DNA of 63,614 bases, the filler included, from Octopus bimaculoides (taxonomy: Eukaryota): NCBI RefSeq assembly GCF_001194135.2. It is 5 parts of 5 records of this genome, joined end to end, with 100 filler letters (N's around TTAATTAATTAA, not from the genome) between each part and the next. Parts side by side here need not be neighbours in the genome. Positions count along the whole stretch, not along the records: positions 1 to 17,778 come from NC_068983.1; 4 more parts are not named here. One strand, written 5' to 3'. The notes beneath the pieces were generated by a model that saw nothing but the letters and a program-made list of their open reading frames with translations, made no database searches and was not told the DNA's origin. Of this stretch, positions 35 to 17,894 are shown one piece after another. Position 1 is the stretch's first letter. Every line of letters starts with the position of its first letter. A program made the position numbers and the translations under genes.

Positions 35-481
35 GCACACACACACACAAATTCGGCAAGGTTGATAAGAAAAAAGCTAACATCATTCTATTCTGTAAAA
101 ATGTTTTGGGACCGGATGCTGAATGAAGAGAAAAAAAGAAGTGGGAAGCGACGACTCGTTAAAAGATGGTGTGATTGCCCTCTTTTAGTATAACATAACA
201 TAATAATATTACATGCAGGGGTGCGTGCTTTTGCATCTCAAACATTATATATTTTAATTGTAAAACTGGGCTATTTGCATGACTCCACTTGAGAATTTCT
301 GAAGAGAACGGTTTCATTAACATAAATATGATAATTCTTCATAACTCTTTGAATGACATCTGTTGCGCCTATGGCATGTCACAGTGTCTTGTCTTCGGAT
401 CATATGAACATACATCTTCCTGGCGGTCTAGGAATTACATACTTAAATACTTGAAAAGAAAGTTTCATATACATGCGATAT

Positions 482-859
482 AGGCGCAGGAGTGGCTGTG
501 TGGTAAGTAGCTTGCTTACCAACCATATGGTTCCGGGTTCAGTCTCACTGCGTGGTACCTTAGGCAAGTGTCTTCTACTATAGCCTCGGGCCGACCAAAG
601 CCTTGTGAGTGGATTTGGTAGACGGAAACTGAAAGAAGCCCGTCGTATATATGTATATGTATATATATATATATGTGTATGTGTGTTTGTGTGTCTGTGT
701 TTGTCCCCGCCCCACCAACTCTTGACAACCGATGCTGGTGTGTTTACGTCTCCGTAACTTAGCGGTTCAGCAAAAAGAGGACGATAGAATAAGTCATGGG
801 TTTGATTTTCTCGACTAAAGGCGGTGCTCCAGCATGGCCACAGTCAAATGACTGAAACA
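482..859 (+). mobile_element. tRNA-derived SINE, family A (full length)
   Basis: Head has A-box TGGCTGTGTGG and B-box GGTTCAGTC, then an internal (TA/TG)n and a tail ending GACTGAAACA. Near-identical copies recur throughout the window. From memory it resembles Octopus OR/OK-type SINEs (unverified). Confidence 0.85.
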
Positions 860-2507: not shown

Positions 2508-3737
2508 AATATTGGGTTAAAACCCCTTTAAATAGATACGCCATTTTTCTGTCATTAATGACAGAGTCGGTATATTTTTAGTGCACGTGTATGCTAGTAC
2601 CAGTAATAACCACATCTATATTGGTCTCAAGTAAAGCAATGAGTCTTCTTAGTTTCTTACTGGTCTTCGTTCAGCTCACATGAAATAGAACTATCATATA
2701 TATAGGTTAGTGTGTCATTAACGGTCTACGATATGTCATAGTTAACTGACTCATGACCTCAGTGCGGTGTCCAGTTTTAGATCAGCGCTCGTTATAATAT
2801 TGCTCATTAGATCTTAAGTTGTGTACTCATCATTAAAAAAACATGTGCCAGCTGGTGATATCAGACAATCGACATAAATTTAGACTTACACATGCTTGTN
2901 NNNNNNNNNNNNNNNNNNNNNNNNNNNNNNNNNNNNNNNNNNNNNNNNNNNNNNNNNNNNNNNNNNNNNNNNNNNNNNNNNNNNNNNNNNNNNNNNNNNN
3001 NNNNNNNNNNNNNNNNNNNNNNNNNNNNNNNNNNNNNNNNNNNNNNNNNNNNNNNNNNNNNNNNNNNNNNNNNNNNNNNNNNNNNNNNNNNNNNNNNNNN
3101 NNNNNNNNNNNNNNNNNNNNNNNNNNNNNNNNNNNNNNNNNNNNNNNNNNNNNNNNNNNNNNNNNNNNNNNNNNNNNNNNNNNNNNNNNNNNNNNNNNNN
3201 NNNNNNNNNNNNNNNNNNNNNNNNNNNNNNNNNNNNNNNNNNNNNNNNNNNNNNNNNNNNNNNNNNNNNNNNNNNNNNNNNNNNNNNNNNNNNNNNNNNN
3301 NNNNNNNNNNNNNNNNNNNNNNNNNNNNNNNNNNNNNNNNNNNNNNNNNNNNNNNNNNNNNNNNNNNNNNNNNNNNNNNNNNNNNNNNNNNNNNNNNNNN
3401 NNNNNNNNNNNNNNNNNNNNNNNNNNNNNNNNNNNNNNNNNNNNNNNNNNNNNNNNNNNNNNNNNNNNNNNNNNNNNNNNNNNNNNNNNNNNNCCCCACA
3501 CACACCCACCCACTCTATTCTGTCTGTTCTTGCCCTCTTCTCTAATTCTGACCTCATCGCCTCTCTTCTCTCTACTCTCACCCTCACCTCCGCTTTAGTC
3601 TGTATCACCACCGCTCTTTGCTATTTAGCCTCGCGTTAGGCAGTGATTTCAGGAAAATTTGGCAGCTATTTCTAGCAGATCAAGAAACCAGGCTGGAGCT
3701 TTCTTGTTTGGATATTTACGGTTAAAAGGGAAATAGT

Positions 3738-4067
3738 TTACTCTTTTACTCTTATACTTGTTTCAGTCATTTGACTGCGGCCATGCTGGAGCACCGCCTT
3801 TTAGTCGAGAAAATCGACCCCAGAACTTATTCTTTGCAGCTTATTCTACCATTGGTTACCAAGCGATGCTGGGGGGGGGGACACAGACACACATATACAT
3901 ACACATATATACATATACACGACGGGCTTCTTTCAGTTTCCGTCTACCAAATCCACTCACAAGGCTTTGGTCGGCCCGAGGCTGCCCAAGGTGCCACGCA
4001 GTAGGACTGAACCCGGAACCATGTGGTTGTTGAGCAAGCTACTTACCACACAGCCACTCCTGCGCCT
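3738..4067 (-). mobile_element. SINE family A, internally deleted
   Basis: Matches family A with segments missing from the tail and head. Confidence 0.8.
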
Positions 4068-4149
4068 TTTACACTATGGAGGATATTTTTCTACCTACAA
4101 ACAAGATATTCAAGAGACACCTCGATTCAGCCAGCAGAATAAAGGATAG

Positions 4150-4830: not shown

Positions 4831-5450
4831 TGTAAAAGAAAGTCCTTATATATTTAATACTCAATATTACATTTATTCAATAAGACATTCAATACTTCAT
4901 TTCATTTTACTATTTATATTATATATTCCATATTCTATATCCCACATTAATTTTATAAGAATATAAATAAAACATAAAAAACAGACATAGTTGGAACTGT
5001 TTTGAATAATATATATATATATNNNNNNNNNNNNNNNNNNNNNNNNNNNNNNNNNNNNNNNNNNNNNNNNNNNNNNNNNNNNNNNNNNNNNNNNNNNNNN
5101 NNNNNNNNNNNNNNNNNNNNNNNNNNNNNNNNNNNNNNNNNNNNNNNNNNNNNNNNNNNNNNNNNNNNNNNNNNNNNNNNNNNNNNNNNNNNNNNNNNNN
5201 NNNNNNNNNNNNNNNNNNNNNNNNNNNNNNNNNNNNNNNNNNNNNNNNNNNNNNNNNNNNNNNNNNNNNNNNNNNNNNNNNNNNNNNNNNNNNNNNNNNN
5301 NNNNNNNNNNNNNNNNNNNNNNNNNNNNNNNNNNNNNNNNNNNNNNNNNNNNNNNNNNNNNNNNNNNNNNNNNNNNNNNNNNNNNNNNNNNNNNNNNNNN
5401 NNNNNNNNNNNNNNNNNNNATATATGTATATATATATACACACTACACAC

Positions 5451-5482
<32 letters not shown>

Positions 5483-5543
5483 CACACTACAAACTATATA
5501 TATATATATGTAAACATACTTTATACATACACACGTTGCACGT

Positions 5544-5850
5544 TGGACAAATGTCTTCTGCTATAGCCCCGGGCCGACCAATGCCTTGTGAGTGGATTTG
5601 GTAGACGGAAACTGAAAGAAGCCCGTTGTATATATACATGTGTGTGTGTTTGTGTATCTGTGTTTGTCCCCAACGTCGCTTGACAACCGATGCTGGTGTG
5701 TTTACGTCTCTGTAACTTAGCGGTTCGGAAAAAAGACCGATAGAATAAGTACTAGGCTTACAAAGAATAATTCCTGAAGTTGATTTGCTTGACTAAAGGC
5801 GGTGCTCCAGCATGGCCGCAGTTAAATGACAGAAGCAAGTAAAATAATAA
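5544..5850 (+). mobile_element. SINE family A, 5'-truncated
   Basis: Body and tail match family A. Confidence 0.8.
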
Positions 5851-7099: not shown

Positions 7100-7519
7100 T
7101 ACTCTTTTACTCTTTTACTTGTTTCAGTCATTTGACTGCGGCCATGCTGGAGCAACACCTTTAGTCGAGCAAATCGACCCCAGGACTTATTCTTTGGAAG
7201 CCTAGTACTTATTCTATCAGTCTCTTTTGCCGAGCCGCTAAGTTACGGAGACGCAAACACACCACCATCGGTTGTCAAGCGATGTTGGAGGGGGGAGGAC
7301 AAACACAAACACGCAAACATATACACACACACATATATATATATACATATATATATGACGGGCTTCTTTCAGTTTCCGTCTACCAAATCCACTCACAAGG
7401 CTTTGGTCGGCCCGAGGCTATAGTAGAAGACACTTGCCCAAGGTGCCACGCAGTGGGACTGAACCCAGAACCATGAGGTTGGTAAGCAAGCTACTTACCA
7501 CACAGCCACTCCTACGCCT
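7100..7519 (-). mobile_element. SINE family A (full length)
   Basis: Reverse-complement match to 482-859. Confidence 0.85.
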
Positions 7520-7732
7520 TTAACTGATACATTCGCGCACAGGCGCATATTAGCAATAAATCTCCCCTGTTTCTAAGCTACAGTCTATATTTATTACTAT
7601 AACGATTTTGGACAGTGATCCTTACTCCACTACCCCACCACTAACCATACATTGTAAAGCGGGACGCAGTCAACTTAACTGGAAATGTGAATGGAAAAGT
7701 CGATGTCAGCTGGATTTGAAGACAGAGCATAA

Positions 7733-8251: not shown

Positions 8252-8544
8252 ACGGCTGTGTGATAAGAAGCTTGCTTCCCAACCACATGGTTCCGGGGTC
8301 CGTCCCACTCCATGGTACCTTGGGCAACTGCCTTGGCCAAATGCCTTTTTTTCTATATTTATTTTTGCTTGCAATAGCCGGTTCTTTTGGTCAAACTGTC
8401 GTATCTCCAGCTGCTTTAAATGTCAAGATATCAAAAATTGTCAAAGTGCAGTACAACGTTTTTGCTATGGAATGGTGAAACTACTTTTTCGTTTTCTGAA
8501 AAAGCAACGTTTTGGACTTACGATACTTTTGCATAATAGCAACG

Positions 8545-8606
<62 letters not shown>

Positions 8607-8825
8607 CTATCTTGTGTTTGTCCCATCACTGCTTGACAACAGGTGTTGGTGTGTTTACGTCCCCGTAATTTAGCGGTTCGGCAAAAGAGGCCGATAGAAT
8701 AAGTACCAGATTTAAATTAATAAATTAATAAGTCCTGGGATTGATTTGTTCGACCAAAACCCTTCAAGATGGTGCCCCATCATGGCCGCAGTCAAAAAGA
8801 CTGAAACTAGGAAAAGAATAAAGAA
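8252..8825 (+). mobile_element. SINE family A pieces (head ~8252-8330, tail ~8598-8825) separated by unrelated sequence and (TG)n
   Basis: Head and tail each match family A. Confidence 0.65.
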
Positions 8826-9039
8826 CAGCAGAATACAGACTGAATGGGATTTGGCTGCTATTTCTAGCGGGTCGAGTGACCACGTGGATTCCAACTAGTT
8901 TAGTTAATTCTATAACACTGAAATGTTAGTTGAAATGACAGCTTGTGATATGTCGTCATGGAGAAACGGACATTAAAACTCATTCCTATTAGTTAAAATG
9001 ATGTTATACCGAGCTAACTGAAAATTCAGGAGAAAATAT

Positions 9040-9354
9040 ATCTCTTTTACTCTTTTACTTGTTTCAGTCTTTTGACTACGGCCATGCTGGAGCACCGCCT
9101 TTAGTCGAGCAAATCGACCCCAGGACTTATTCTTTGTAAGCCTTGTACTTATTTTATCGGTCTTTTGCCGAACCGCTAAGTTACGGGGACTTAAACACAC
9201 CACCATCGGTTGTCAAGCGATGTTGGGGTGGACAAACACAGACACACAAACATACACACACATAGACATATATATACATATATACGACAGGCTTCTTTCA
9301 GTTTCCGTCTACCAAATCCACTCACAAGGCTTTGGTCGGCCCGAGGCTATAGTA
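9040..9354 (-). mobile_element. SINE family A running into a gap
   Basis: Matches family A. Confidence 0.85.
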
Positions 9355-10024
9355 NNNNNNNNNNNNNNNNNNNNNNNNNNNNNNNNNNNNNNNNNNNNNN
9401 NNNNNNNNNNNNNNNNNNNNNNNNNNNNNNNNNNNNNNNNNNNNNNNNNNNNNNNNNNNNNNNNNNNNNNNNNNNNNNNNNNNNNNNNNNNNNNNNNNNN
9501 NNNNNNNNNNNNNNNNNNNNNNNNNNNNNNNNNNNNNNNNNNNNNNNNNNNNNNNNNNNNNNNNNNNNNNNNNNNNNNNNNNNNNNNNNNNNNNNNNNNN
9601 NNNNNNNNNNNNNNNNNNNNNNNNNNNNNNNNNNNNNNNNNNNNNNNNNNNNNNNNNNNNNNNNNNNNNNNNNNNNNNNNNNNNNNNNNNNNNNNNNNNN
9701 NNNNNNNNNNNNNNNNNNNNNNNNNNNNNNNNNNNNNNNNNNNNNNNNNNNNNNNNNNNNNNNNNNNNNNNNNNNNNNNNNNNNNNNNNNNNNNNNNNNN
9801 NNNNNNNNNNNNNNNNNNNNNNNNNNNNNNNNNNNNNNNNNNNNNNNNNNNNNNNNNNNNNNNNNNNNNNNNNNNNNNNNNNNNNNNNNNNNNNNNNNNN
9901 NNNNNNNNNNNNNNNNNNNNNNNNNNNNNNNNNNNNNNNNNNNNNNNNNNNNNNNNNNNNNNNNNNNNNNNNNNNNNNNNNNNNNNNNNNNNNNNNNNNN
10001 NNNNNNNNNNNNATACACTGATAT

Positions 10025-10545: not shown

Positions 10546-11188
10546 TATCTTTGGATAGAGAAAGAGATACTCTGCTAACATGTAATGCCTATTTGTTCAT
10601 TGCTTTAGGGACAACACTTGTAAATAACATGTAAATATAATAAATTTAGGCTCAATATTACAGATTCAAATGCAAATAGAATCAAGATTTATAAAAAAAA
10701 TAACTGAAAAAGAATACAAAGATAAAATTTTTCCTTTTGTAAAATGAAAGGTCATTTCTGAACTTTTACAGTAAAGGAACGGATTAACAATATATACATT
10801 TATAATAAACAATAATTATATACTGAAGTATAATATTTAAACCAAATACACTCGAAAGCTACAACGGGGAGAAAAATATTTACTAATATTAATATTATTT
10901 TTAAATTTACATTAAACAGCTAATCTTAAAATGATTTTGTAAAAAAGTTTTCTAAAGAATGACAATATTCCCGTTCAATATATAACACAATGCTTCTTTG
11001 AATGTCCGATATTTATAAGCAATGTTGTTTTAATTAATGTTTCCAAATCAACATTGGATATTTCTTCAGCATTGGTGAAGAGTACATAATGATTATTGTT
11101 GGATTATATTTCCAATTCAAAGAACAGTTTTTCTTTTTTTTTTTTTCATCCAATATCTTTCTCTCTTACTCTGTTCAGTTTTATCCAA

Positions 11189-12514
11189 TCAAGCCTCTGT
11201 GAGTACTTTCCATATCATTAGACATATTCCTTCGTCTGGATTATTCCTGCAAATAGTTTCGATCCGTTGCAGTTTTTCAGAAAGTTTCTCTGTCTTGTTA
11301 TTATCCGATTCCCCGTCTTTGTCGCTCATATCAGCTTCGTAGTTCAAATCTGTTTGAGATTCCTTTTCTAATATCAACTTACATCTACGGTGACAATCAA
11401 CCTGTTTTGCCATCGCTTCAACACCAGATTCACTATTTCTCCTGCAAGCATCACCTTGGCCGGAATTCTCCCTTTCACATTTTTCATAACAATGACTCTT
11501 TCTGTTGTTTCTGTTGTAATTATTATTACTCAAACCACGCAGTCGACACAAATCATATGTTTGACCTTTATAGTTTGCATGAAAAAATGCTTTAAACCAT
11601 TTTCCGAAGAAGAAATTCCCTTTAAAGGTTCCTTTTATTAAATTCTCCACTGGAATATCCTTATCGACTGCAAAATTTTTAAAAGCAGCTTGAAGGCATT
11701 TGAAATTCTGGCGTTTATCCGTGTCGGTAACAGGACTGAATTTTATATCTTCAAAAGCAATTGAGCCAGGAAATAATATTCCTATACCAACACAAAAGTC
11801 GACACCGGTTCCTAATTCACCAATGCTAGACAATTTCGGAGCGATTGCTCTGCGGAACCAAATAATTAAATCTTCTTTGCTTACATTTTGAACCCGAAAC
11901 GTATTATTCACAGCCAAATTCTTTGATTTGACGAATATTTTCGGCGGTTGAATCATAGCGTTTTTATGAACAGATTCATTATCACGGTGATTCCCAGATT
12001 TCAAGATTTCTTCTTTGTTTTTGTCGACTGCTGACTGAACATTCGTTTCAGAGAAGTCCTTTGTATCTTGAGAATTTTCTCTATTTTGAGATTTTGTAGC
12101 CCTTTTCTTGAACTTTTTCTTTTTGCATGAGGCTCTAATTTGGTTTATATCATAAGGTTGGCCTTGATAATTCTCCATAAAGAATGATCGGAACCATTGC
12201 CCAAACTGATAACAACTTTTAAAATTTCCTTTTAAAATATCTTCAACGGGAATCTCTTTTTCAACACCATTTTTCTCAAAGACTGTTTGAAGGTAAGTAA
12301 AATTATGGCGCCGATCGTTTTCTGTAAGTCTGTCAATCTTTATATTCCGTAAATCAACAGAGCCAGGGAAAAGTATTTCCATTCCTAAGCAAAGATCGGA
12401 TCCAGACCATAGGTCTTCGATTGCATTGAACTTCGGAGAAACTGTACGACGGAACCAAATAATCAAATCTTCTTTACTGACATGTTCAATTTTAAAACAA
12501 TTATTTGCACTCAT
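11189..12514 (-). CDS. Divergent EB1/MAPRE-family (RP/EB) microtubule-associated protein with two tandem CH domains and a degenerate C-terminal EBH domain; intronless CDS
   Basis: Uninterrupted 441-aa ORF, ATG to TGA. aa ~12-128 and ~200-327 each carry EB1 CH motifs: LFPGS, NF..LQ..F...GV.K.IPV..L.KG.F, F.QWF..FF..NY.G..YD. The C-terminus EKLQRIETICRNN...IWKVL aligns with the EB1 EBH segment GKLRNIELICQEN...IVDIL. No symbol given because orthology is unclear. Confidence 0.9.
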   Translation of the reverse strand: MSANNCFKIEHVSKEDLIIWFRRTVSPKFNAIEDLWSGSDLCLGMEILFPGSVDLRNIKIDRLTENDRRHNFTYLQTVFEKNGVEKEIPVEDILKGNFKSCYQFGQWFRSFFMENYQGQPYDINQIRASCKKKKFKKRATKSQNRENSQDTKDFSETNVQSAVDKNKEEILKSGNHRDNESVHKNAMIQPPKIFVKSKNLAVNNTFRVQNVSKEDLIIWFRRAIAPKLSSIGELGTGVDFCVGIGILFPGSIAFEDIKFSPVTDTDKRQNFKCLQAAFKNFAVDKDIPVENLIKGTFKGNFFFGKWFKAFFHANYKGQTYDLCRLRGLSNNNYNRNNRKSHCYEKCERENSGQGDACRRNSESGVEAMAKQVDCHRRCKLILEKESQTDLNYEADMSDKDGESDNNKTEKLSEKLQRIETICRNNPDEGICLMIWKVLTEA

Positions 12515-12602: not shown

Positions 12603-12697
12603 CTAAAAAGCAAACGATATTAAATACTAGAAATAAAATAACAAAGTGAACGATAAATAAGTTTACGTGACAACACCAGACAGCAGAACGCAACTGA
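12603..12697 (-). promoter_or_regulatory. Candidate core promoter and 5'-UTR mini-intron of the EB1-like gene
   Basis: The minus strand has an Inr-like TCAGTT at 12697-12692. A 64-nt T-rich GTAAAC...TTTGCTTTTTAG segment at 12666-12603 fits an intron upstream of the ATG. The surrounding DNA is CpG-rich. Confidence 0.3.
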
Positions 12698-15600
12698 CTG
12701 GTTACAGTTTCTAAACGTATGGAAAACGTTTGAAGACAAACGCCACTGAAGGACGCTTTTTTAATTTAAATAGTTTGCCTTTTCTATTCGGTCGTACTTT
12801 GTGACATTACATTTTCTATCGAAATTATCGCGAATAGAAACATTAGTTATAATTTTTTTACATAAATTTATAACTAAACCTTTTAGTGACATAAATGAAG
12901 CGAAATGAATGGATAAAACCGGAAATCATAACCGAATCACGAGGCTTGGTTCGTTGAAAGCTTAACTCTGTTCTATAGTTATTTTGGAAGTAAGATCACG
13001 CGGTTTATTGGAAACTGATGTTAAATTAGAATGGATATCATGTGATCCATTGCATCTTTGATACACCCCTAAAGATTTATTTATTTTATCGGAAATACGT
13101 CAGCTTAATTTCAAACACATAACACGTGGATCTGTGCCCGTGCTACACCACTTCAAACGCAACATAACTATTCATATAAATGTTTACTGTTCACAACCTG
13201 GAATTGACCAATCCATGGCTATTGTTTACAACTTCATTAACCGAGTTCACCACATCGTCCGCTCGTATGCAGGAGTAAACACCTGATCGTTTTGACAGTC
13301 TACTGTTCTTTGTCCTATTACACATTCACAATTTTGAGTAAATGTTTACTATTACACCATTTAAAGAGGAAATGTGGTATTCCTGTGGTATTTTAGTGTG
13401 TTTTGAACGAATCTGACCTTCAAAAATGTCGAAAATTACTTGTTGTTTGGGTAAATTATTTGTTGTTTAACGGCGGTGCATCAGCATGGCCGCAGGCTCT
13501 GAGATGAAACTATAGAAAAAAAAAACTATTCTCCACCCCGAAGACAGACAAGGTTATAACAGTGTGAGTCTGTGAAACTTCTATTCTTATATATATATAA
13601 TGAGTGCGCGCGTGATTTGCTTAGTCGAAGGGCAGATGACACCTAAAGATGTTTTTCACTGTCTCTAAGACTTAACAGAACGAAGAAGAGAGAAGTTATC
13701 TTCAGATAGAAGACTAGATTCGAATGGTGACTAGATTCCAATCGTCAGCAGAGAGTAGCTCCGCTGAAGACAATCCAAGACCAGGTGGTGATGCTCAGTC
13801 TAGTGACGAATGAAATTTGTATACTGTTCAGTTCACATAATTGTGTAGAATAAGAAGCAGAAATTCTGTGAATCTGCTTCTAAGAGACTATGTGAAAAAA
13901 GCTTTATCTCTGATTTGATTAACGCTACAGAAACGATAGCGATCTTATCTTACCTGTCTTACTTGATAAGGTTAATTCTAACATTTCATCTTTAGAGTTC
14001 AGTGACATGTGAACCTTATATGTCTTGGCTTTCAGTTCGGGATCTAGAAAATGATCAGCCTCGGACAAGTGTTGAATCTACATAGCTGAAATACACTAAG
14101 AAAAAAGCATGAAATAGTAGTCAAATATCTCTCAACTTACATACTACCCTCTTAGATAGAAAAATAAAAAAACACACTGAGTACAAAGTCTTATATATTC
14201 ATAAAGTCAGAATGATCATAGTTGCAACGACTTTATTCTTATATGTGCTTGCACAGAATTCTGCTGCAGCTAAACAACAATAAGGGCGCATTTAAATGGT
14301 CGTTCGATTTGACAGAAATAGCAACCAAATCTCTTTGAAATTTCAAACTGCCGTCTTAGAAAAGACTGCAATGCTTTTATTCATCGGTCAGTTCGTTAAG
14401 AGCTGACCTTGGGCTAAACACTTACAGCACAGAAGCAACAGTAGCCTTTTTTTCCGATATATTCTCACAATACATTAAGTTTCTCCAATCTCCAGGCCCC
14501 ACTGCTGACCAGATCACTCTTAGTTCCTGACTCCACCCTTCTGATCCCAGAAGGCATTCACAGACTATTACAAATACCGCAGCTTCCCCTTGGTAGTAGT
14601 CTAAAGTTAAAAAATAGAATGTGTTCAGTTATTTTTTTGCCAGACGACCGACCAACGCGGCTTTTGGTTATCTTTTTCAAAAATCTATTCAGCTTTTTTT
14701 CTATTACTGCGAACACAAACTGATGATATAATTAATCATTCCAACATAAACATTCCCTAAATTGAAAAAAAAAAAAAAAAGGATTTATGCTAAAGAGTCG
14801 TCAAACTTTATTTATGCATTTATATGTTTATATTTGAATTTCTTTTTGCATCTATATTTATGCATTTGTTTCTTATTAATGATTTCAAAATTCTTGTTGA
14901 AAGATATTTCAGCACATCTACGCTTCTACGCCTTCCAATTAGCGTCACAAACCGTTCTTTTTTCTTTGTGTGTGTTTTTATTTTTTCGTTTTTCTCTAGT
15001 TTAGCCAGAATAGGAAAGGCTGTACTTATAACCTTTTTCATGGACTTCCTGACTGGTTGCAGGAAGTTATACTCACATCGGAGTACTTAGCCCAAATAGT
15101 TGCAACGGAGTGTACTCTGTAAAAAGAGAAACAGTTGATATCGTTCAATCTATCCATAATTTCATTTAGAAGTCTCACGAGACGGCAGTTCTCACATGGG
15201 TCTTGAGCAGATCACGCCACCCGGTTTAATACCATAACCTAATCCTTGAGCTTTTTGTGTATTTCACCCTGTTGCATGCATTCAAATCAGACGTACGGTT
15301 CCCTCCACACTCATGCCTTTGATTAGGGTTGACTAAACAGCAGACATTTGGAAATAAAATGGACTATAGGTAATTACCACATTCCAACCACCGTATGAAA
15401 TTAATCCTGCAATCAATGCATTAAAAGACCCTAAATTTCATATGTACATAACACGAAAACGATGTACAGAACGTACATATATTTCATATAACATAACATG
15501 AAAACCGTGTATAGAAAGTACATTAATGCAAGTGGAGTTAAATCCCCTATTTTTTTCTTTTTTTTTTTTTTTTTTTTTTTTTTGTAAGACTTAATCCACA

Positions 15601-17308: not shown

Positions 17309-17670
17309 GCGCAGGAGTGGCTGTGTGGTAAGAAGCTTGCTTCCCAACCACATGGTTCCGGGTTCAGTCCAACTGCGTGGCACCTTGGGCAAATGATGTC
17401 TACTATAGCCTCGGGACGACCAAAGCCTTGTGAGTGGATTTGTTAGACGGAAACTGAAAGAAGCCCGTTGTATATATATGTATATGTGTATTTGTGTCCG
17501 TGTTTGTCGTCCCATCATCGCTTGACAACTGATATTAATGTGTTTACGTGCCCGTAACCTAGTGGTTCGGCAGACGGGACCCATAGAATAAGATCAGGCT
17601 TAGAAAAAGTAAGTCCAGGGCGGTACTCCAGCATGGCCTCAGTCAAATGACTGAAACAAGTAAAAGAATA
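17309..17670 (+). mobile_element. SINE family A
   Basis: Matches family A from head to tail. Confidence 0.85.
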
Positions 17671-17894
17671 TATATATATTTATGATTAGATATATATATC
17701 TGCGTCTGTATCTATATATACATTTAACGAATATACATATATTTTAATGATTATATATATATATATATATATATATATNNNNNNNNNNNNNNNNNNNNNN
17801 NNNNNNNNNNNNNNNNNNNNNNTTAATTAATTAANNNNNNNNNNNNNNNNNNNNNNNNNNNNNNNNNNNNNNNNNNNNAAAATTTTTTTTGACT

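What the first reader, a model, noticed from the sequence alone, without database searches (positions are those of the whole stretch)
11189..12514. Single-chain double-CH EB1-like protein: an intronless, probably retroposed EB paralog that may mimic an EB dimer
Seen: an intact 441-aa ORF amid decayed TEs holds two full EB-type CH domains (aa ~12-128 and ~200-327). Both start with the same VSKEDLIIWFRR, which indicates an internal duplication, yet they differ at many other positions and both remain open. A ~70-aa linker with a KKKKFKKR basic patch joins them. Established: canonical EB1/EB3/Mal3/Bim1 have one CH per chain and present two CH domains only by dimerising through the EBH coiled coil; animal EB genes are usually multi-exon. 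Inference: a retrocopy whose CH duplicated could track or bundle microtubules as a monomer, possibly in the male germ line as with other fast-evolving EB retroparalogs. I do not know of a described cephalopod protein with this layout.
Basis: partly seen in the sequence, partly recalled or inferred. Interest (0 to 1): 0.82.

Follow-up and report, generated by a model that had tools for sequence, protein, structure and literature searches.

The report
Octopus EB-like protein with two CH domains
This is a real, conserved, intron-free octopus gene for a microtubule end-binding (EB)-type protein that carries two microtubule-binding CH domains in one chain and has lost the usual dimerising coiled coil, so it is an uncharacterised natural variant of a well-known protein family.

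Summary
Window 11189-12514, on the minus strand, is an intact 441-aa ORF in Octopus bimaculoides. It has two complete EB-type CH domains (aa 8-128 and 206-327) joined by a 77-aa basic disordered linker.

- **Real gene:** the same single-exon gene is present in O. vulgaris, O. sinensis, another octopus and Argonauta hians. A 488-aa probable ortholog occurs in a more distant, unidentified lineage.
- **Under constraint, not fast-evolving:** both CH domains are under strong purifying selection, with dN/dS of 0.03-0.09.
- **Altered C-terminus:** the coiled coil, the FYF pocket residues and the acidic EEY tail are gone. Only a short EBH-like helix hairpin remains.
- **Old duplication:** CH1 and CH2 are 49% identical. 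The second unit begins at a fossil start, LAVNN from MAVNN.
- **Family context:** the gene belongs to a cephalopod radiation of intronless EB-like genes, which includes a second, separate double-CH family.

Most likely it binds microtubules bivalently as a single chain and favours the lattice over growing tips. That is inferred, not shown. I could not test expression or oligomeric state.

The retrocopy origin is plausible but ancient. The idea of a fast-evolving male-germline gene is not supported. I rate it a new variant of a known kind, of moderate interest.

The parts
11189..12514 (-). Complete single-exon CDS of 441 aa plus a TGA stop at 11189-11191. It encodes the double-CH EB-like protein.
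   Evidence: ORF list. The identical protein is annotated in O. bimaculoides GCA_001194135.2 with a gene range equal to the CDS length. Overall dN/dS against Argonauta is 0.117.
12131..12493 (-). CH1, an EB-type calponin-homology domain (aa 8-128). It is acidic in octopods (net charge -2) and is the more diverged of the two.
   Evidence: PDB phmmer matches it to the EB3 CH domain at about 2e-26. The local profile envelope is aa 8-126. AF2 pLDDT is 83-93. dN/dS is 0.086.
11900..12130 (-). Linker 1 (aa 129-205). It is disordered and basic (net +9). KKKKFKKR lies at aa 131-138 (window 12101-12124).
   Evidence: AF2 pLDDT is below 50 for aa 133-199. Charge is and coordinates. It evolves faster than the CH domains, with dN/dS of 0.6-0.8 within Octopus.
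11534..11899 (-). CH2, an EB-type calponin-homology domain (aa 206-327). It is basic (net +6), closest to canonical EB1, and the most constrained part of the protein.
   Evidence: PDB phmmer matches it to the EB1 CH domain at 3e-29. dN/dS is 0.033 and it is 93% identical to the Argonauta domain. EB1 K89 is kept and Q102 is replaced by K.
11900..11917 (-). Fossil N-terminus of the second repeat unit: L200-A-V-N-N-T (TTG GCT GTG AAT AAT ACG). It is colinear with M1-S-A-N-N-C of unit 1 and matches the EB-family start MAVN.
   Evidence: The local CH1/CH2 alignment starts at M1 opposite L200. Codons are shown. Family E begins MAVNNFKVK and canonical EB1 begins MAVNVY.
11303..11533 (-). Linker 2 (aa 328-404), disordered. 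It holds the motif ENSGQGDA (GQGDA at aa 352-356, window 11447-11461), which is specific to the double-CH family, and the family-wide SQTD motif (aa 386-389).
   Evidence: AF2 pLDDT is below 50. E349, N350 and G352-A356 (GQGDA) are invariant between the octopod and lineage-X proteins; position 351 is S in octopods and I in lineage X. SQTD also occurs in families F and D.
11192..11302 (-). C-terminal helix hairpin (aa 405-441), a remnant of the EB-homology (EBH) four-helix-bundle segment. It has no preceding coiled coil, no FYF motif and no acidic EEY tail.
   Evidence: AF2 predicts helices at aa 405-424 and 429-440 with pLDDT 70-75. hhalign against canonical EBH gives 90.5% probability and E 1.4e-6, covering only the KLRNIELICQ...VLQRIVDILY part. 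Pfam EB1 is not hit. A PDB profile search finds no EB1 C-terminus.
12686..12757 (-). A conserved non-coding block 172-243 nt upstream of the ATG, shared with Argonauta. It is a candidate core promoter or TSS region.
   Evidence: Local alignment score is 45, against 23.5 +/- 2.6 (maximum 32) for shuffles. Otherwise Obim-Ahia DNA homology stops at the CDS edges.
11128..11146 (-). An A-rich tract (A13 G A5) starting about 42 nt after the stop codon. It may be a relic poly(A) tail or part of a polyadenylation region. The evidence is inconclusive.
   Evidence: Sequence is. The tract varies among Octopus species, and there is an AAATAAGAAAAAG stretch at a similar distance in Argonauta. Conserved sequence continues downstream within Octopus.

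Best explanation
**What it is (shown).** This is a functional, single-exon O. bimaculoides gene for an EB-family (MAPRE-like) protein. Its layout is CH1, a 77-aa basic disordered linker, CH2, a second disordered linker, and a short EBH-like helix hairpin.

**How it arose (inferred).** It belongs to a cephalopod radiation of intronless EB-like genes. Within that radiation, a tandem duplication or fusion placed an extra CH-plus-linker unit in front of a complete ancestral ORF. The old start codon of that ORF survives as L200 in LAVNN.

**How it works (inferred).**
- Canonical EBs need two CH domains for robust microtubule binding, and they obtain them by coiled-coil dimerisation. Here the coiled coil is gone and the second CH domain is supplied covalently.
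- One polypeptide would therefore bind microtubules bivalently. The disordered linker should be long enough to reach neighbouring EB sites, or a neighbouring microtubule.
- The octopod protein is basic overall (pI about 9), lacks the acidic C-terminal domain and tail that give EBs their tip specificity, and has K at the EB1 Q102 position. It should therefore favour lattice binding, stabilisation or bundling over acting as a tip-tracking hub.
- The SxIP pocket aromatics and the C-terminal EEY are missing, so the classic +TIP recruitment role is probably lost.
For: **Identity and fold:**

**Real and constrained**
- Single-exon orthologs occur in O. vulgaris, O. sinensis, an unnamed octopus and A. 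hians.
- Obim-Ahia dN/dS is 0.117 overall, 0.086 for CH1 and 0.033 for CH2.
- In lineage X, the intact 488-aa P0172 compared with L010 gives dN/dS of 0.073 for CH1 and 0.058 for CH2, at dS 0.74.
- Obim-Ahia DNA homology is confined to the CDS plus one upstream block.

**Coiled coil lost, EBH remnant kept**
- AF2 shows only helices at aa 405-424 and 429-440 after a disordered stretch from aa 328 to 407.
- hhalign aligns the C-terminus only to the bundle part of EBH.
- The sequence comparison shows EKLSEKL in place of RDFYFGKL, and the protein ends at ...VLTEA.

**Charge:** pI 8.8, net +10, linker 1 +9, no acidic tail.

**Literature**
- Removing or neutralising the acidic EB C-terminus increases lattice binding, and dimeric CH-plus-linker is needed for full activity (PMC3154886).
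- EB1 K100E/Q102E impairs microtubule binding (PMC5042579).
- EB1 K89 is kept in both CH domains. Q102 is K in both, and K100 is N in CH1 and T in CH2.

**Origin**
- The repeat starts at M1 opposite L200, whose codon is TTG in Octopus.
- There is no recent DNA repeat, and the two halves are about 66% identical in DNA.

**Parallel case:** a second octopod family (P0080, P0181) has two EB-type CH domains and no C-terminal domain at all.
Against: - There is no experimental or expression evidence of any kind. The Logan contigs that carry the gene begin in microsatellite or A-rich low-complexity sequence and look genomic.
- The retained and conserved C-terminal hairpin could still mediate homo- or hetero-dimerisation.
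- CH1 is acidic in octopods (net -2) and has lost several basic surface residues found in EB1 (K66, K76, K83, K100). It may not bind microtubules.
- In lineage X the charge pattern is different: CH1 is +9 and the protein keeps a tail of net charge -21. The lattice-bias argument therefore applies to octopods only.
- The AF2 alignment was shallow (14 sequences, pTM 0.38), so it says nothing about how the two domains are arranged relative to each other.
Confidence: 0.55

Rival explanations
1. The protein still dimerises through the retained EBH-like hairpin, either with itself or with other EB-like or canonical EB proteins. It would then present four CH domains and act mainly as a microtubule cross-linker or bundler, or as an adaptor. 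This would resemble Drosophila Mst27D, which dimerises through its C-terminal region and bundles microtubules.
For: - The C-terminal hairpin is conserved: K414, L415, I418, C422, P426, I434 and L438 are invariant across octopods and lineage X.
- It is predicted to be helical.
- It aligns to the four-helix-bundle part of EBH.
- Mst27D is a precedent (PMC10359004).
Against: - The roughly 25-residue coiled-coil stretch that precedes the bundle in EB1 is absent. The helix here is only 20 residues long.
- Pfam EB1 is not detected, and a PDB profile search finds no EB1 C-terminus.
- The second double-CH family has no C-terminal domain at all, which shows that tandem CH without a dimeriser is viable.
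Confidence: 0.25
2. Only CH2 is the microtubule-binding module. CH1 has taken on a new role, such as a partner-binding or autoregulatory domain. On this reading the protein is not a dimer mimic but a single-headed EB-like MAP with an extra CH-fold domain.
For: - CH2 is more constrained (dN/dS 0.033 against 0.086), more EB1-like (41% against 37% identity) and basic (+6).
- Octopod CH1 is acidic (-2) and has substitutions at the EB1 positions K66, K76, K83, K100 and N104.
Against: - CH1 keeps K89, W110 and the overall EB CH fold, and it is still under strong purifying selection in both lineages.
- In lineage X, CH1 is the more basic domain (+9), so the asymmetry is not consistent across lineages.
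Confidence: 0.17
3. The ORF is a non-functional young retrocopy, a pseudogene, or an assembly or annotation artefact.
For: - The gene sits in gene-poor, repeat-rich DNA with assembly gaps nearby.
- One relative (L010) shows two 1-nt insertions in CH2.
Against: - The ORF is intact in five or more independent assemblies of at least four species.
- dN/dS is 0.03-0.18.
- All other indels between orthologs are multiples of three.
- The two halves are 49% identical in protein, with no recent DNA repeat.
Confidence: 0.02
4. The two CH domains form an actinin- or spectrin-type tandem actin-binding domain rather than a microtubule binder.
For: Tandem CH is the classic actin-binding layout. Foldseek lists fimbrin and alpha-actinin actin-binding domains weakly, at E 0.03-0.1.
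Against: - Those matches have rmsd of about 15 Å.
- Both domains individually match EB-type CH domains best, by sequence and by fold.
- The domains are separated by 77 disordered residues instead of being packed together.
Confidence: 0.02

Closest known systems
Canonical EB/MAPRE proteins (EB1, EB2, EB3, Mal3, Bim1)
   Same: Both CH domains are EB-type by sequence (E about 1e-26 to 1e-29 against EB1 and EB3) and by fold (target TM-score 0.85-0.94). K89 and the WF(K/R)xFF helix are conserved. There is a basic stretch after the CH domain. A remnant of the EBH bundle segment (KLxxIExxC...I...L) lies at the C-terminus.
   Different: There are two CH domains per chain instead of one. There is no coiled coil, no FYF or Y247 pocket residues, and no acidic EEY/F tail. 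Pfam EB1 is not detected. K100 and Q102 are changed. The CDS has no introns. The octopod protein is basic overall, with pI about 9 against about 5 for human EB1.
Drosophila Mst27D and other testis-specific EB1-family genes (CG15306, CG32371, CG2955)
   Same: Both are lineage-specific, diverged EB1-family paralogs whose similarity to EB1 is largely limited to the CH domain. Mst27D is reported to have arisen by retroposition. It binds along the microtubule lattice rather than as comets, and it bundles microtubules (PMC10359004).
   Different: Mst27D has one CH domain and dimerises through a C-terminal coiled coil. Its partner (Nup358) and testis expression are known. The octopus protein has two CH domains, no coiled coil, and unknown expression and partners. 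The two expansions are independent.
Engineered EB constructs: CH-linker monomers and EB-NL-LZ artificial dimers
   Same: These experiments show that pairing two CH-plus-linker units restores robust microtubule binding. They also show that a non-acidic dimeriser shifts binding toward the lattice (PMC3154886). The octopus protein looks like a natural covalent version of this arrangement.
   Different: The pairing here is by tandem fusion in one chain with a 77-aa linker, not by a leucine zipper. The two CH domains are only 49% identical, so the pair is asymmetric.
Second cephalopod double-CH EB-like family (A. hians P0080, O. vulgaris P0181, and others)
   Same: It has an intronless CDS, two EB-type CH domains in one chain and no coiled coil. 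It occurs in octopods and in the same unidentified ENA and Logan sources.
   Different: It has a roughly 90-aa N-terminal extension and no C-terminal domain at all. Its CH domains group with each other (100% bootstrap) and apart from this gene's domains, which suggests a separate duplication. It evolves much faster, with Octopus-Argonauta identity of about 50% against about 75% for this gene.

Membership tests
EB/MAPRE family | N-terminal EB-type calponin-homology domain | tested here: met
   There are two such domains. Pfam CH matches in two stretches. PDB phmmer matches EB1 and EB3 CH domains at 1e-26 to 1e-29. Foldseek's top hits are EB1, EB3, Mal3 and Bim1 CH domains.
EB/MAPRE family | Parallel coiled coil that dimerises the protein | tested here: not met
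   AF2 predicts disorder from aa 328 to 407, followed by only a 20-residue helix. The region that aligns with the heptad stretch of canonical EBs is absent. Oligomeric state itself was not testable.
EB/MAPRE family | EB-homology (EBH) domain, Pfam PF03271, with the FYF/Y247 SxIP-binding pocket | tested here: inconclusive
   Pfam EB1 is not hit even at E <= 1, and a PDB profile search gives no EB1 hit. However, hhalign gives 90.5% probability against the bundle part of EBH. The FYF position reads LSE and the Y247 position reads T. The identities of the pocket residues are recalled from the literature, not tested here.
EB/MAPRE family | Acidic C-terminal tail ending in EEY/F (CAP-Gly binding) | tested here: not met
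   The octopod proteins end at ...KVLTEA or ...KILADD. Lineage X keeps an acidic tail, but its EEVEEY is internal, 20 residues from the end.
EB/MAPRE family | Autonomous tracking of growing microtubule plus ends | not testable with these tools
   This needs TIRF reconstitution or live imaging.
EB/MAPRE family | Microtubule-contact residues of the CH domain (EB1 K89, K100, Q102) | tested here: inconclusive
   K89 is kept in both domains. K100 is N in CH1 and T in CH2. Q102 is K in both. K100E/Q102E impairs binding in EB1 (PMC5042579), but the effect of these particular substitutions is unknown.
Retrogene (processed retrocopy) | Intronless coding sequence | tested here: met
   The gene range equals the CDS length in O. 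bimaculoides, O. vulgaris, O. sinensis and A. hians. The ORF is also continuous in genomic contigs of lineage X.
Retrogene (processed retrocopy) | An identifiable intron-containing parent gene elsewhere in the genome | not tested
   The canonical octopus MAPRE gene was not retrieved. All five EB-like families I examined are themselves single-exon, so the immediate parent was probably already intronless.
Retrogene (processed retrocopy) | Relic poly(A) tail and flanking target-site duplications | tested here: inconclusive
   An A-rich tract lies about 42 nt after the stop in Octopus, with a similar stretch in Argonauta. Conserved sequence continues beyond it. Target-site duplications were not searched for and would not be expected to survive at this age.
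Tandem-CH actin-binding domain (alpha-actinin, spectrin, fimbrin type) | Closely packed type-1 plus type-2 CH pair | tested here: not met
   Both domains are EB-type and are separated by 77 disordered residues. The Foldseek matches to actin-binding domains have rmsd of about 15 Å.

The most novel reading that the evidence does not exclude
Cephalopods may have replaced coiled-coil dimerisation of EB proteins with covalent tandem CH domains twice, independently: once in this family and once in the P0080/P0181 family. This would have happened within a previously undescribed radiation of intronless EB-like genes. The result would be natural single-chain EB 'dimers' that act as monomeric, lattice-biased microtubule stabilisers or bundlers in specialised arrays such as the spermatid manchette or long neuronal processes.
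Probability: 0.3. Interest if true: 0.7.

Novelty: new variant of a known kind. Interest (0 to 1): 0.55.

Why it matters
EB proteins are the central hub of the microtubule plus-end network. How their two CH domains cooperate is known mainly from engineered monomers and zipper dimers.

This protein has two diverged EB-type CH domains fused in one chain, no coiled coil and no acidic tail, and it is conserved under purifying selection. It is a ready-made test of three questions:
- whether bivalency alone is enough for microtubule binding;
- how linker length and charge set the preference for tip or lattice;
- whether the two heads of an EB can specialise.

The finding also exposes an apparently undescribed cephalopod expansion of intronless EB-like genes. 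That expansion parallels the testis-specific EB1 paralogs of Drosophila and may relate to cephalopod-specific microtubule arrays.

Tried and rejected
1. **Identifying the distant lineage X.** I searched papers for the run and assembly accessions (ERR3431203, ERR12370320/23, ERR12408771, ERR14857104/5, ERZ21867824, SRR11869384/90/91). Only neighbouring accessions from unrelated projects turned up. The lineage stays unidentified. I think it is a non-octopod cephalopod because the same sources carry other cephalopod-type EB-like families.
2. **CH-domain tree.** A first bootstrap run timed out. My own NJ tree groups the four double-CH domains and the two CH1 domains only weakly (8-33% bootstrap). 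Quartet-informative sites split 3:1:2. The CH domains alone therefore cannot prove that the duplication predates the octopod/X split. Orthology rests on shared architecture, spacing, the GQGDA motif and the C-terminus.
3. **Expression evidence from Logan contigs.** The contigs are colinear with the genome and begin in (TG)n or A-rich tracts, so they are genomic and uninformative.
4. **PDB profile search with the C-terminal alignment.** It gave no EB1 hit. The EBH assignment rests on hhalign only.
5. **Six-frame Pfam scan of the flanks for decayed TE proteins.** I characterised the repeats by self-BLAST instead.
6. **Rfam scan of the window.** It found nothing.
7. **DNA direct-repeat search inside the CDS.** It found only chance 16-17-mers.
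8. **Recent gene conversion as the cause of the identical VSKEDLIIWFRR.** I rejected this because the two copies differ at synonymous sites in both Octopus and Argonauta.
Full report
**1. The observation**

Window 11189-12514 holds an intact 441-aa ORF (ATG to TGA) on the minus strand.
- Pfam CH matches in two stretches, E 3.9e-12.
- Against PDB sequences, aa 9-122 match the EB3 CH domain (about 2e-26) and aa 206-325 match the EB1 CH domain (3e-29). Bim1 and Mal3 follow further down the list.
- A CH profile built locally places full-length domains at aa 8-126 and 207-325.
- AlphaFold2, run on a 14-sequence alignment, gives two confident CH folds with pLDDT 80-93. It predicts disorder for aa 133-199 and 328-407, and a C-terminal helix hairpin at aa 405-424 and 429-440 with pLDDT 70-75.
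- Foldseek's best PDB matches are EB3, EB1, Mal3 and Bim1 CH domains, with target TM-scores of 0.85-0.94.
- VSKEDLIIWFRR occurs at aa 12-23 and 211-222. KKKKFKKR lies at aa 131-138.

It only omitted the strand.

**2. Source and reality of the gene**

The exact protein is annotated in Octopus bimaculoides GCA_001194135.2, on CM046603.1 at 10,226,477-10,227,802. The gene range equals the CDS length.

Near-identical 441-aa orthologs, all single-exon, are present in:
- O. vulgaris and O. sinensis (XP_036356937.1, auto-named 'RP/EB family member 2-like');
- an unnamed octopus in three Logan run assemblies.

Argonauta hians has a 428-aa single-exon ortholog, 73-76% identical over the full length.

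Nei-Gojobori dN/dS for O. bimaculoides against A. hians:

| Region | dN/dS |
|---|---|
| Whole CDS | 0.117 |
| CH1 | 0.086 |
| CH2 | 0.033 |
| Second linker | 0.17 |

The first linker is saturated at synonymous sites in this pair. Within Octopus its dN/dS is 0.6-0.8.

DNA similarity between the two genera stops at the CDS edges. The exceptions are a dispersed short repeat and a 72-nt block 172-243 nt upstream of the ATG. This is a functional gene. It is not a decaying retrocopy or an assembly artefact.

**3. A more distant relative**

I ran an exhaustive HMMER search of 1.84 billion cluster representatives. It returned 1484 hits at E <= 0.001. In only two of them did a single aligned stretch span both CH domains of the query: the Argonauta protein and P0017.

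*P0017 and P0172.*
- P0017 comes from a 130-kb contig of ENA assembly ERZ21867824.
- Its relative P0172 (488 aa, 72% identical to P0017) is intact and has the same layout. CH2 starts at residue 206, as in octopus. A continuous ORF carries it in several run assemblies.
- The two share with the octopod protein the N-terminal FK(I/V)E..SK(E/D)DLI(I/V)WFR, the motif EN(S/I)GQGDA after CH2, and the C-terminal KL..I...C...P......I...L.
- Between the two lineage-X species, dN/dS is 0.073 for CH1 and 0.058 for CH2, at dS 0.74.

*The two insertions in the ENA contig.* The contig carries two 1-nt insertions in CH2, and every other indel is a multiple of three. The disruption is therefore an assembly error or very recent.

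*Identity of lineage X.* I could not identify the organism. It is probably a non-octopod cephalopod.

*Orthology.* CH-domain trees and quartet sites do not resolve whether the duplication predates the split. I infer orthology from the shared architecture and motifs, at roughly 85% confidence.

**4. Origin of the two CH domains**

- CH1 and CH2 are 48.8% identical in protein and about 66% identical in DNA.
- The shared 12-mer differs at synonymous sites in both Octopus and Argonauta. It is therefore held by selection, not by recent gene conversion.
- The internal repeat begins exactly at M1 opposite L200. Residues 200-204 read LAVNN (TTG GCT GTG AAT AAT), against the EB-family start MAVN(N/V).

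The second half (aa 200-441) therefore looks like a complete ancestral single-CH ORF whose start codon has mutated. A CH-plus-linker unit was added in front of it by tandem duplication or fusion. This step is an inference.

**5. Family context and the retrocopy question**

The closest single-CH relatives are several octopod and cephalopod EB-like families, 275-761 aa long. Some have long coiled coils. One, family F, still passes Pfam EB1 and keeps Q102.

Every family I checked has a single-exon CDS:
- family A in O. bimaculoides;
- family C in O. sinensis;
- family F in A. hians;
- this gene;
- a second double-CH family.

Animal MAPRE genes are normally multi-exon; that is established knowledge and was not tested here. 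A retroposition at or near the base of this radiation is therefore plausible. It is ancient, however, and it does not belong to this gene in particular. An A-rich tract about 42 nt after the stop is the only possible poly(A) relic, and it is inconclusive.

**6. The C-terminus**

- Pfam EB1 is not detected, and a PDB profile search finds no EB1 C-terminus.
- hhalign aligns aa 414-441 to the KLRNIELICQ...VLQRIVDILY segment of canonical EBH, at 90.5% probability and E 1.4e-6. Families F and D2 provide visible intermediates.
- Three canonical features are missing: the heptad coiled coil upstream, the FYF motif (here LSE), the Y247-equivalent (here T), and any acidic EEY tail.
- Lineage X keeps an acidic tail (net charge -21) with an internal EEVEEY.

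**7. Mechanism (inferred)**

Published work supports three points:
- Monomeric CH-linker fragments bind microtubules poorly.
- Artificial dimers restore binding.
- Removing or neutralising the acidic C-terminus shifts EBs from tips to the lattice (PMC3154886).

The octopus protein supplies the second CH domain covalently. Its inter-domain linker is basic (+9). It is basic overall (pI 8.8, net +10) and has no acidic tail. EB1 K89 is conserved in both heads. K100 and Q102, whose double glutamate mutant impairs binding (PMC5042579), read N/K in CH1 and T/K in CH2.

The most economical reading is a single-chain, bivalent, lattice-biased microtubule binder or bundler that no longer recruits SxIP or CAP-Gly partners.

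Two rivals remain open. The protein may still dimerise through the retained hairpin, giving a tetravalent bundler like Drosophila Mst27D (PMC10359004). Alternatively, CH1, which is acidic and more diverged in octopods, may have a new role. Nothing here tests expression. The Logan contigs are genomic, and no paper on these genes was found.

**8. A second double-CH family**

P0080 (A. hians, 415 aa, single exon), P0181 (O. vulgaris, 428 aa, auto-named 'RP/EB family member 1') and relatives in Logan and ENA sources have a roughly 90-aa N-terminal extension, two EB-type CH domains and no C-terminal domain. Their CH domains group together at 100% bootstrap, apart from those of this gene. This suggests an independent duplication. 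The tandem layout therefore recurs in cephalopods, and in both families it comes without a coiled coil.

**9. Verdict**

The double-CH, intronless and dimer-substitute elements are reasonable. The 'fast-evolving retrocopy' and 'male germline' elements are unsupported, or contradicted by the strong constraint.
- This is a new architectural variant of the EB family. It is present in databases only under automatic names, and it is uncharacterised as far as I could find.

Noticed in passing
window 479-859, 1438-1836, 3737-4072, 5534-5850, 7100-7524, 8546-8822, 9034-9354, 17309-17681 (fragment at 8254-8334): A roughly 400-nt SINE-like interspersed repeat is present in eight copies plus a fragment, in both orientations, at 72-91% identity. 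Its translated frames give the recurring 'ASFSFRLPNPLTRLWSARG' peptide in the ORF list. Three of the four N gaps (2900-3493, 5023-5419, 9355-10012) have a copy at or close to one edge. Rfam found no tRNA or other RNA family in the window.
   Followed up: partly
L017 3001-4248 (A. hians BAAFZT010000005.1); also proteins P0181 (O. vulgaris), P0179, P0180 and P0131: A second, separate family of intronless EB-like proteins has two EB-type CH domains in one chain, a roughly 90-aa N-terminal extension and no C-terminal domain. It evolves fast, with Octopus-Argonauta identity of about 50%.
   Followed up: partly
L008 3001-3900, L009 3001-3939, L018 2001-2918; proteins P0003-P0014, P0018-P0023, P0081, P0139: Cephalopods carry a radiation of at least seven diverged EB-like gene families, 275-761 aa long, some with very long coiled coils. 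All the families I checked have a single-exon CDS. Most have K at the EB1 Q102 position. Family F, which includes a Sepia pharaonis protein, keeps Q102 and the Pfam EB1 motif. I found no paper describing this expansion.
   Followed up: partly
L010 about 10860-10900 (ENA ERZ21867824 ctg112704l): The lineage-X copy on this contig has two 1-nt insertions 42 nt apart within CH2, which shift the frame and create a TAA. Everything else is open, and dN/dS against the intact relative is 0.18. This is either an assembly error or a very recent inactivation.
   Followed up: partly
window 12686-12757 (minus strand): A 72-nt non-coding block 172-243 nt upstream of the ATG is conserved between Octopus and Argonauta. 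It contains CGTTTTCCA(T/A)ACGTTT and TTGCGTTC. It is the only flanking sequence conserved at that distance and is a candidate promoter element.
   Followed up: partly
L011 1687-1830 (P0172 aa 441-488): The lineage-X ortholog keeps a strongly acidic tail (net charge -21) with an internal EEVEEY followed by 20 more residues. This looks like a fossil EB C-terminal EEY motif that is no longer terminal. A sister sequence reads EEVEKY.
   Followed up: no
proteins P0105 (Aethina tumida), P0021 (Ladona fulva), P0079, P0147: Some insect and other EB1 database entries show partial second CH matches. These are fragments or repeated exons and look like annotation or assembly artefacts, not true tandem-CH proteins.
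   Followed up: no
In A. hians, two EB-like genes (GAB1600285.1 and GAB1600286.1) have consecutive accessions on one contig, which suggests local tandem duplication within the family.
   Followed up: no
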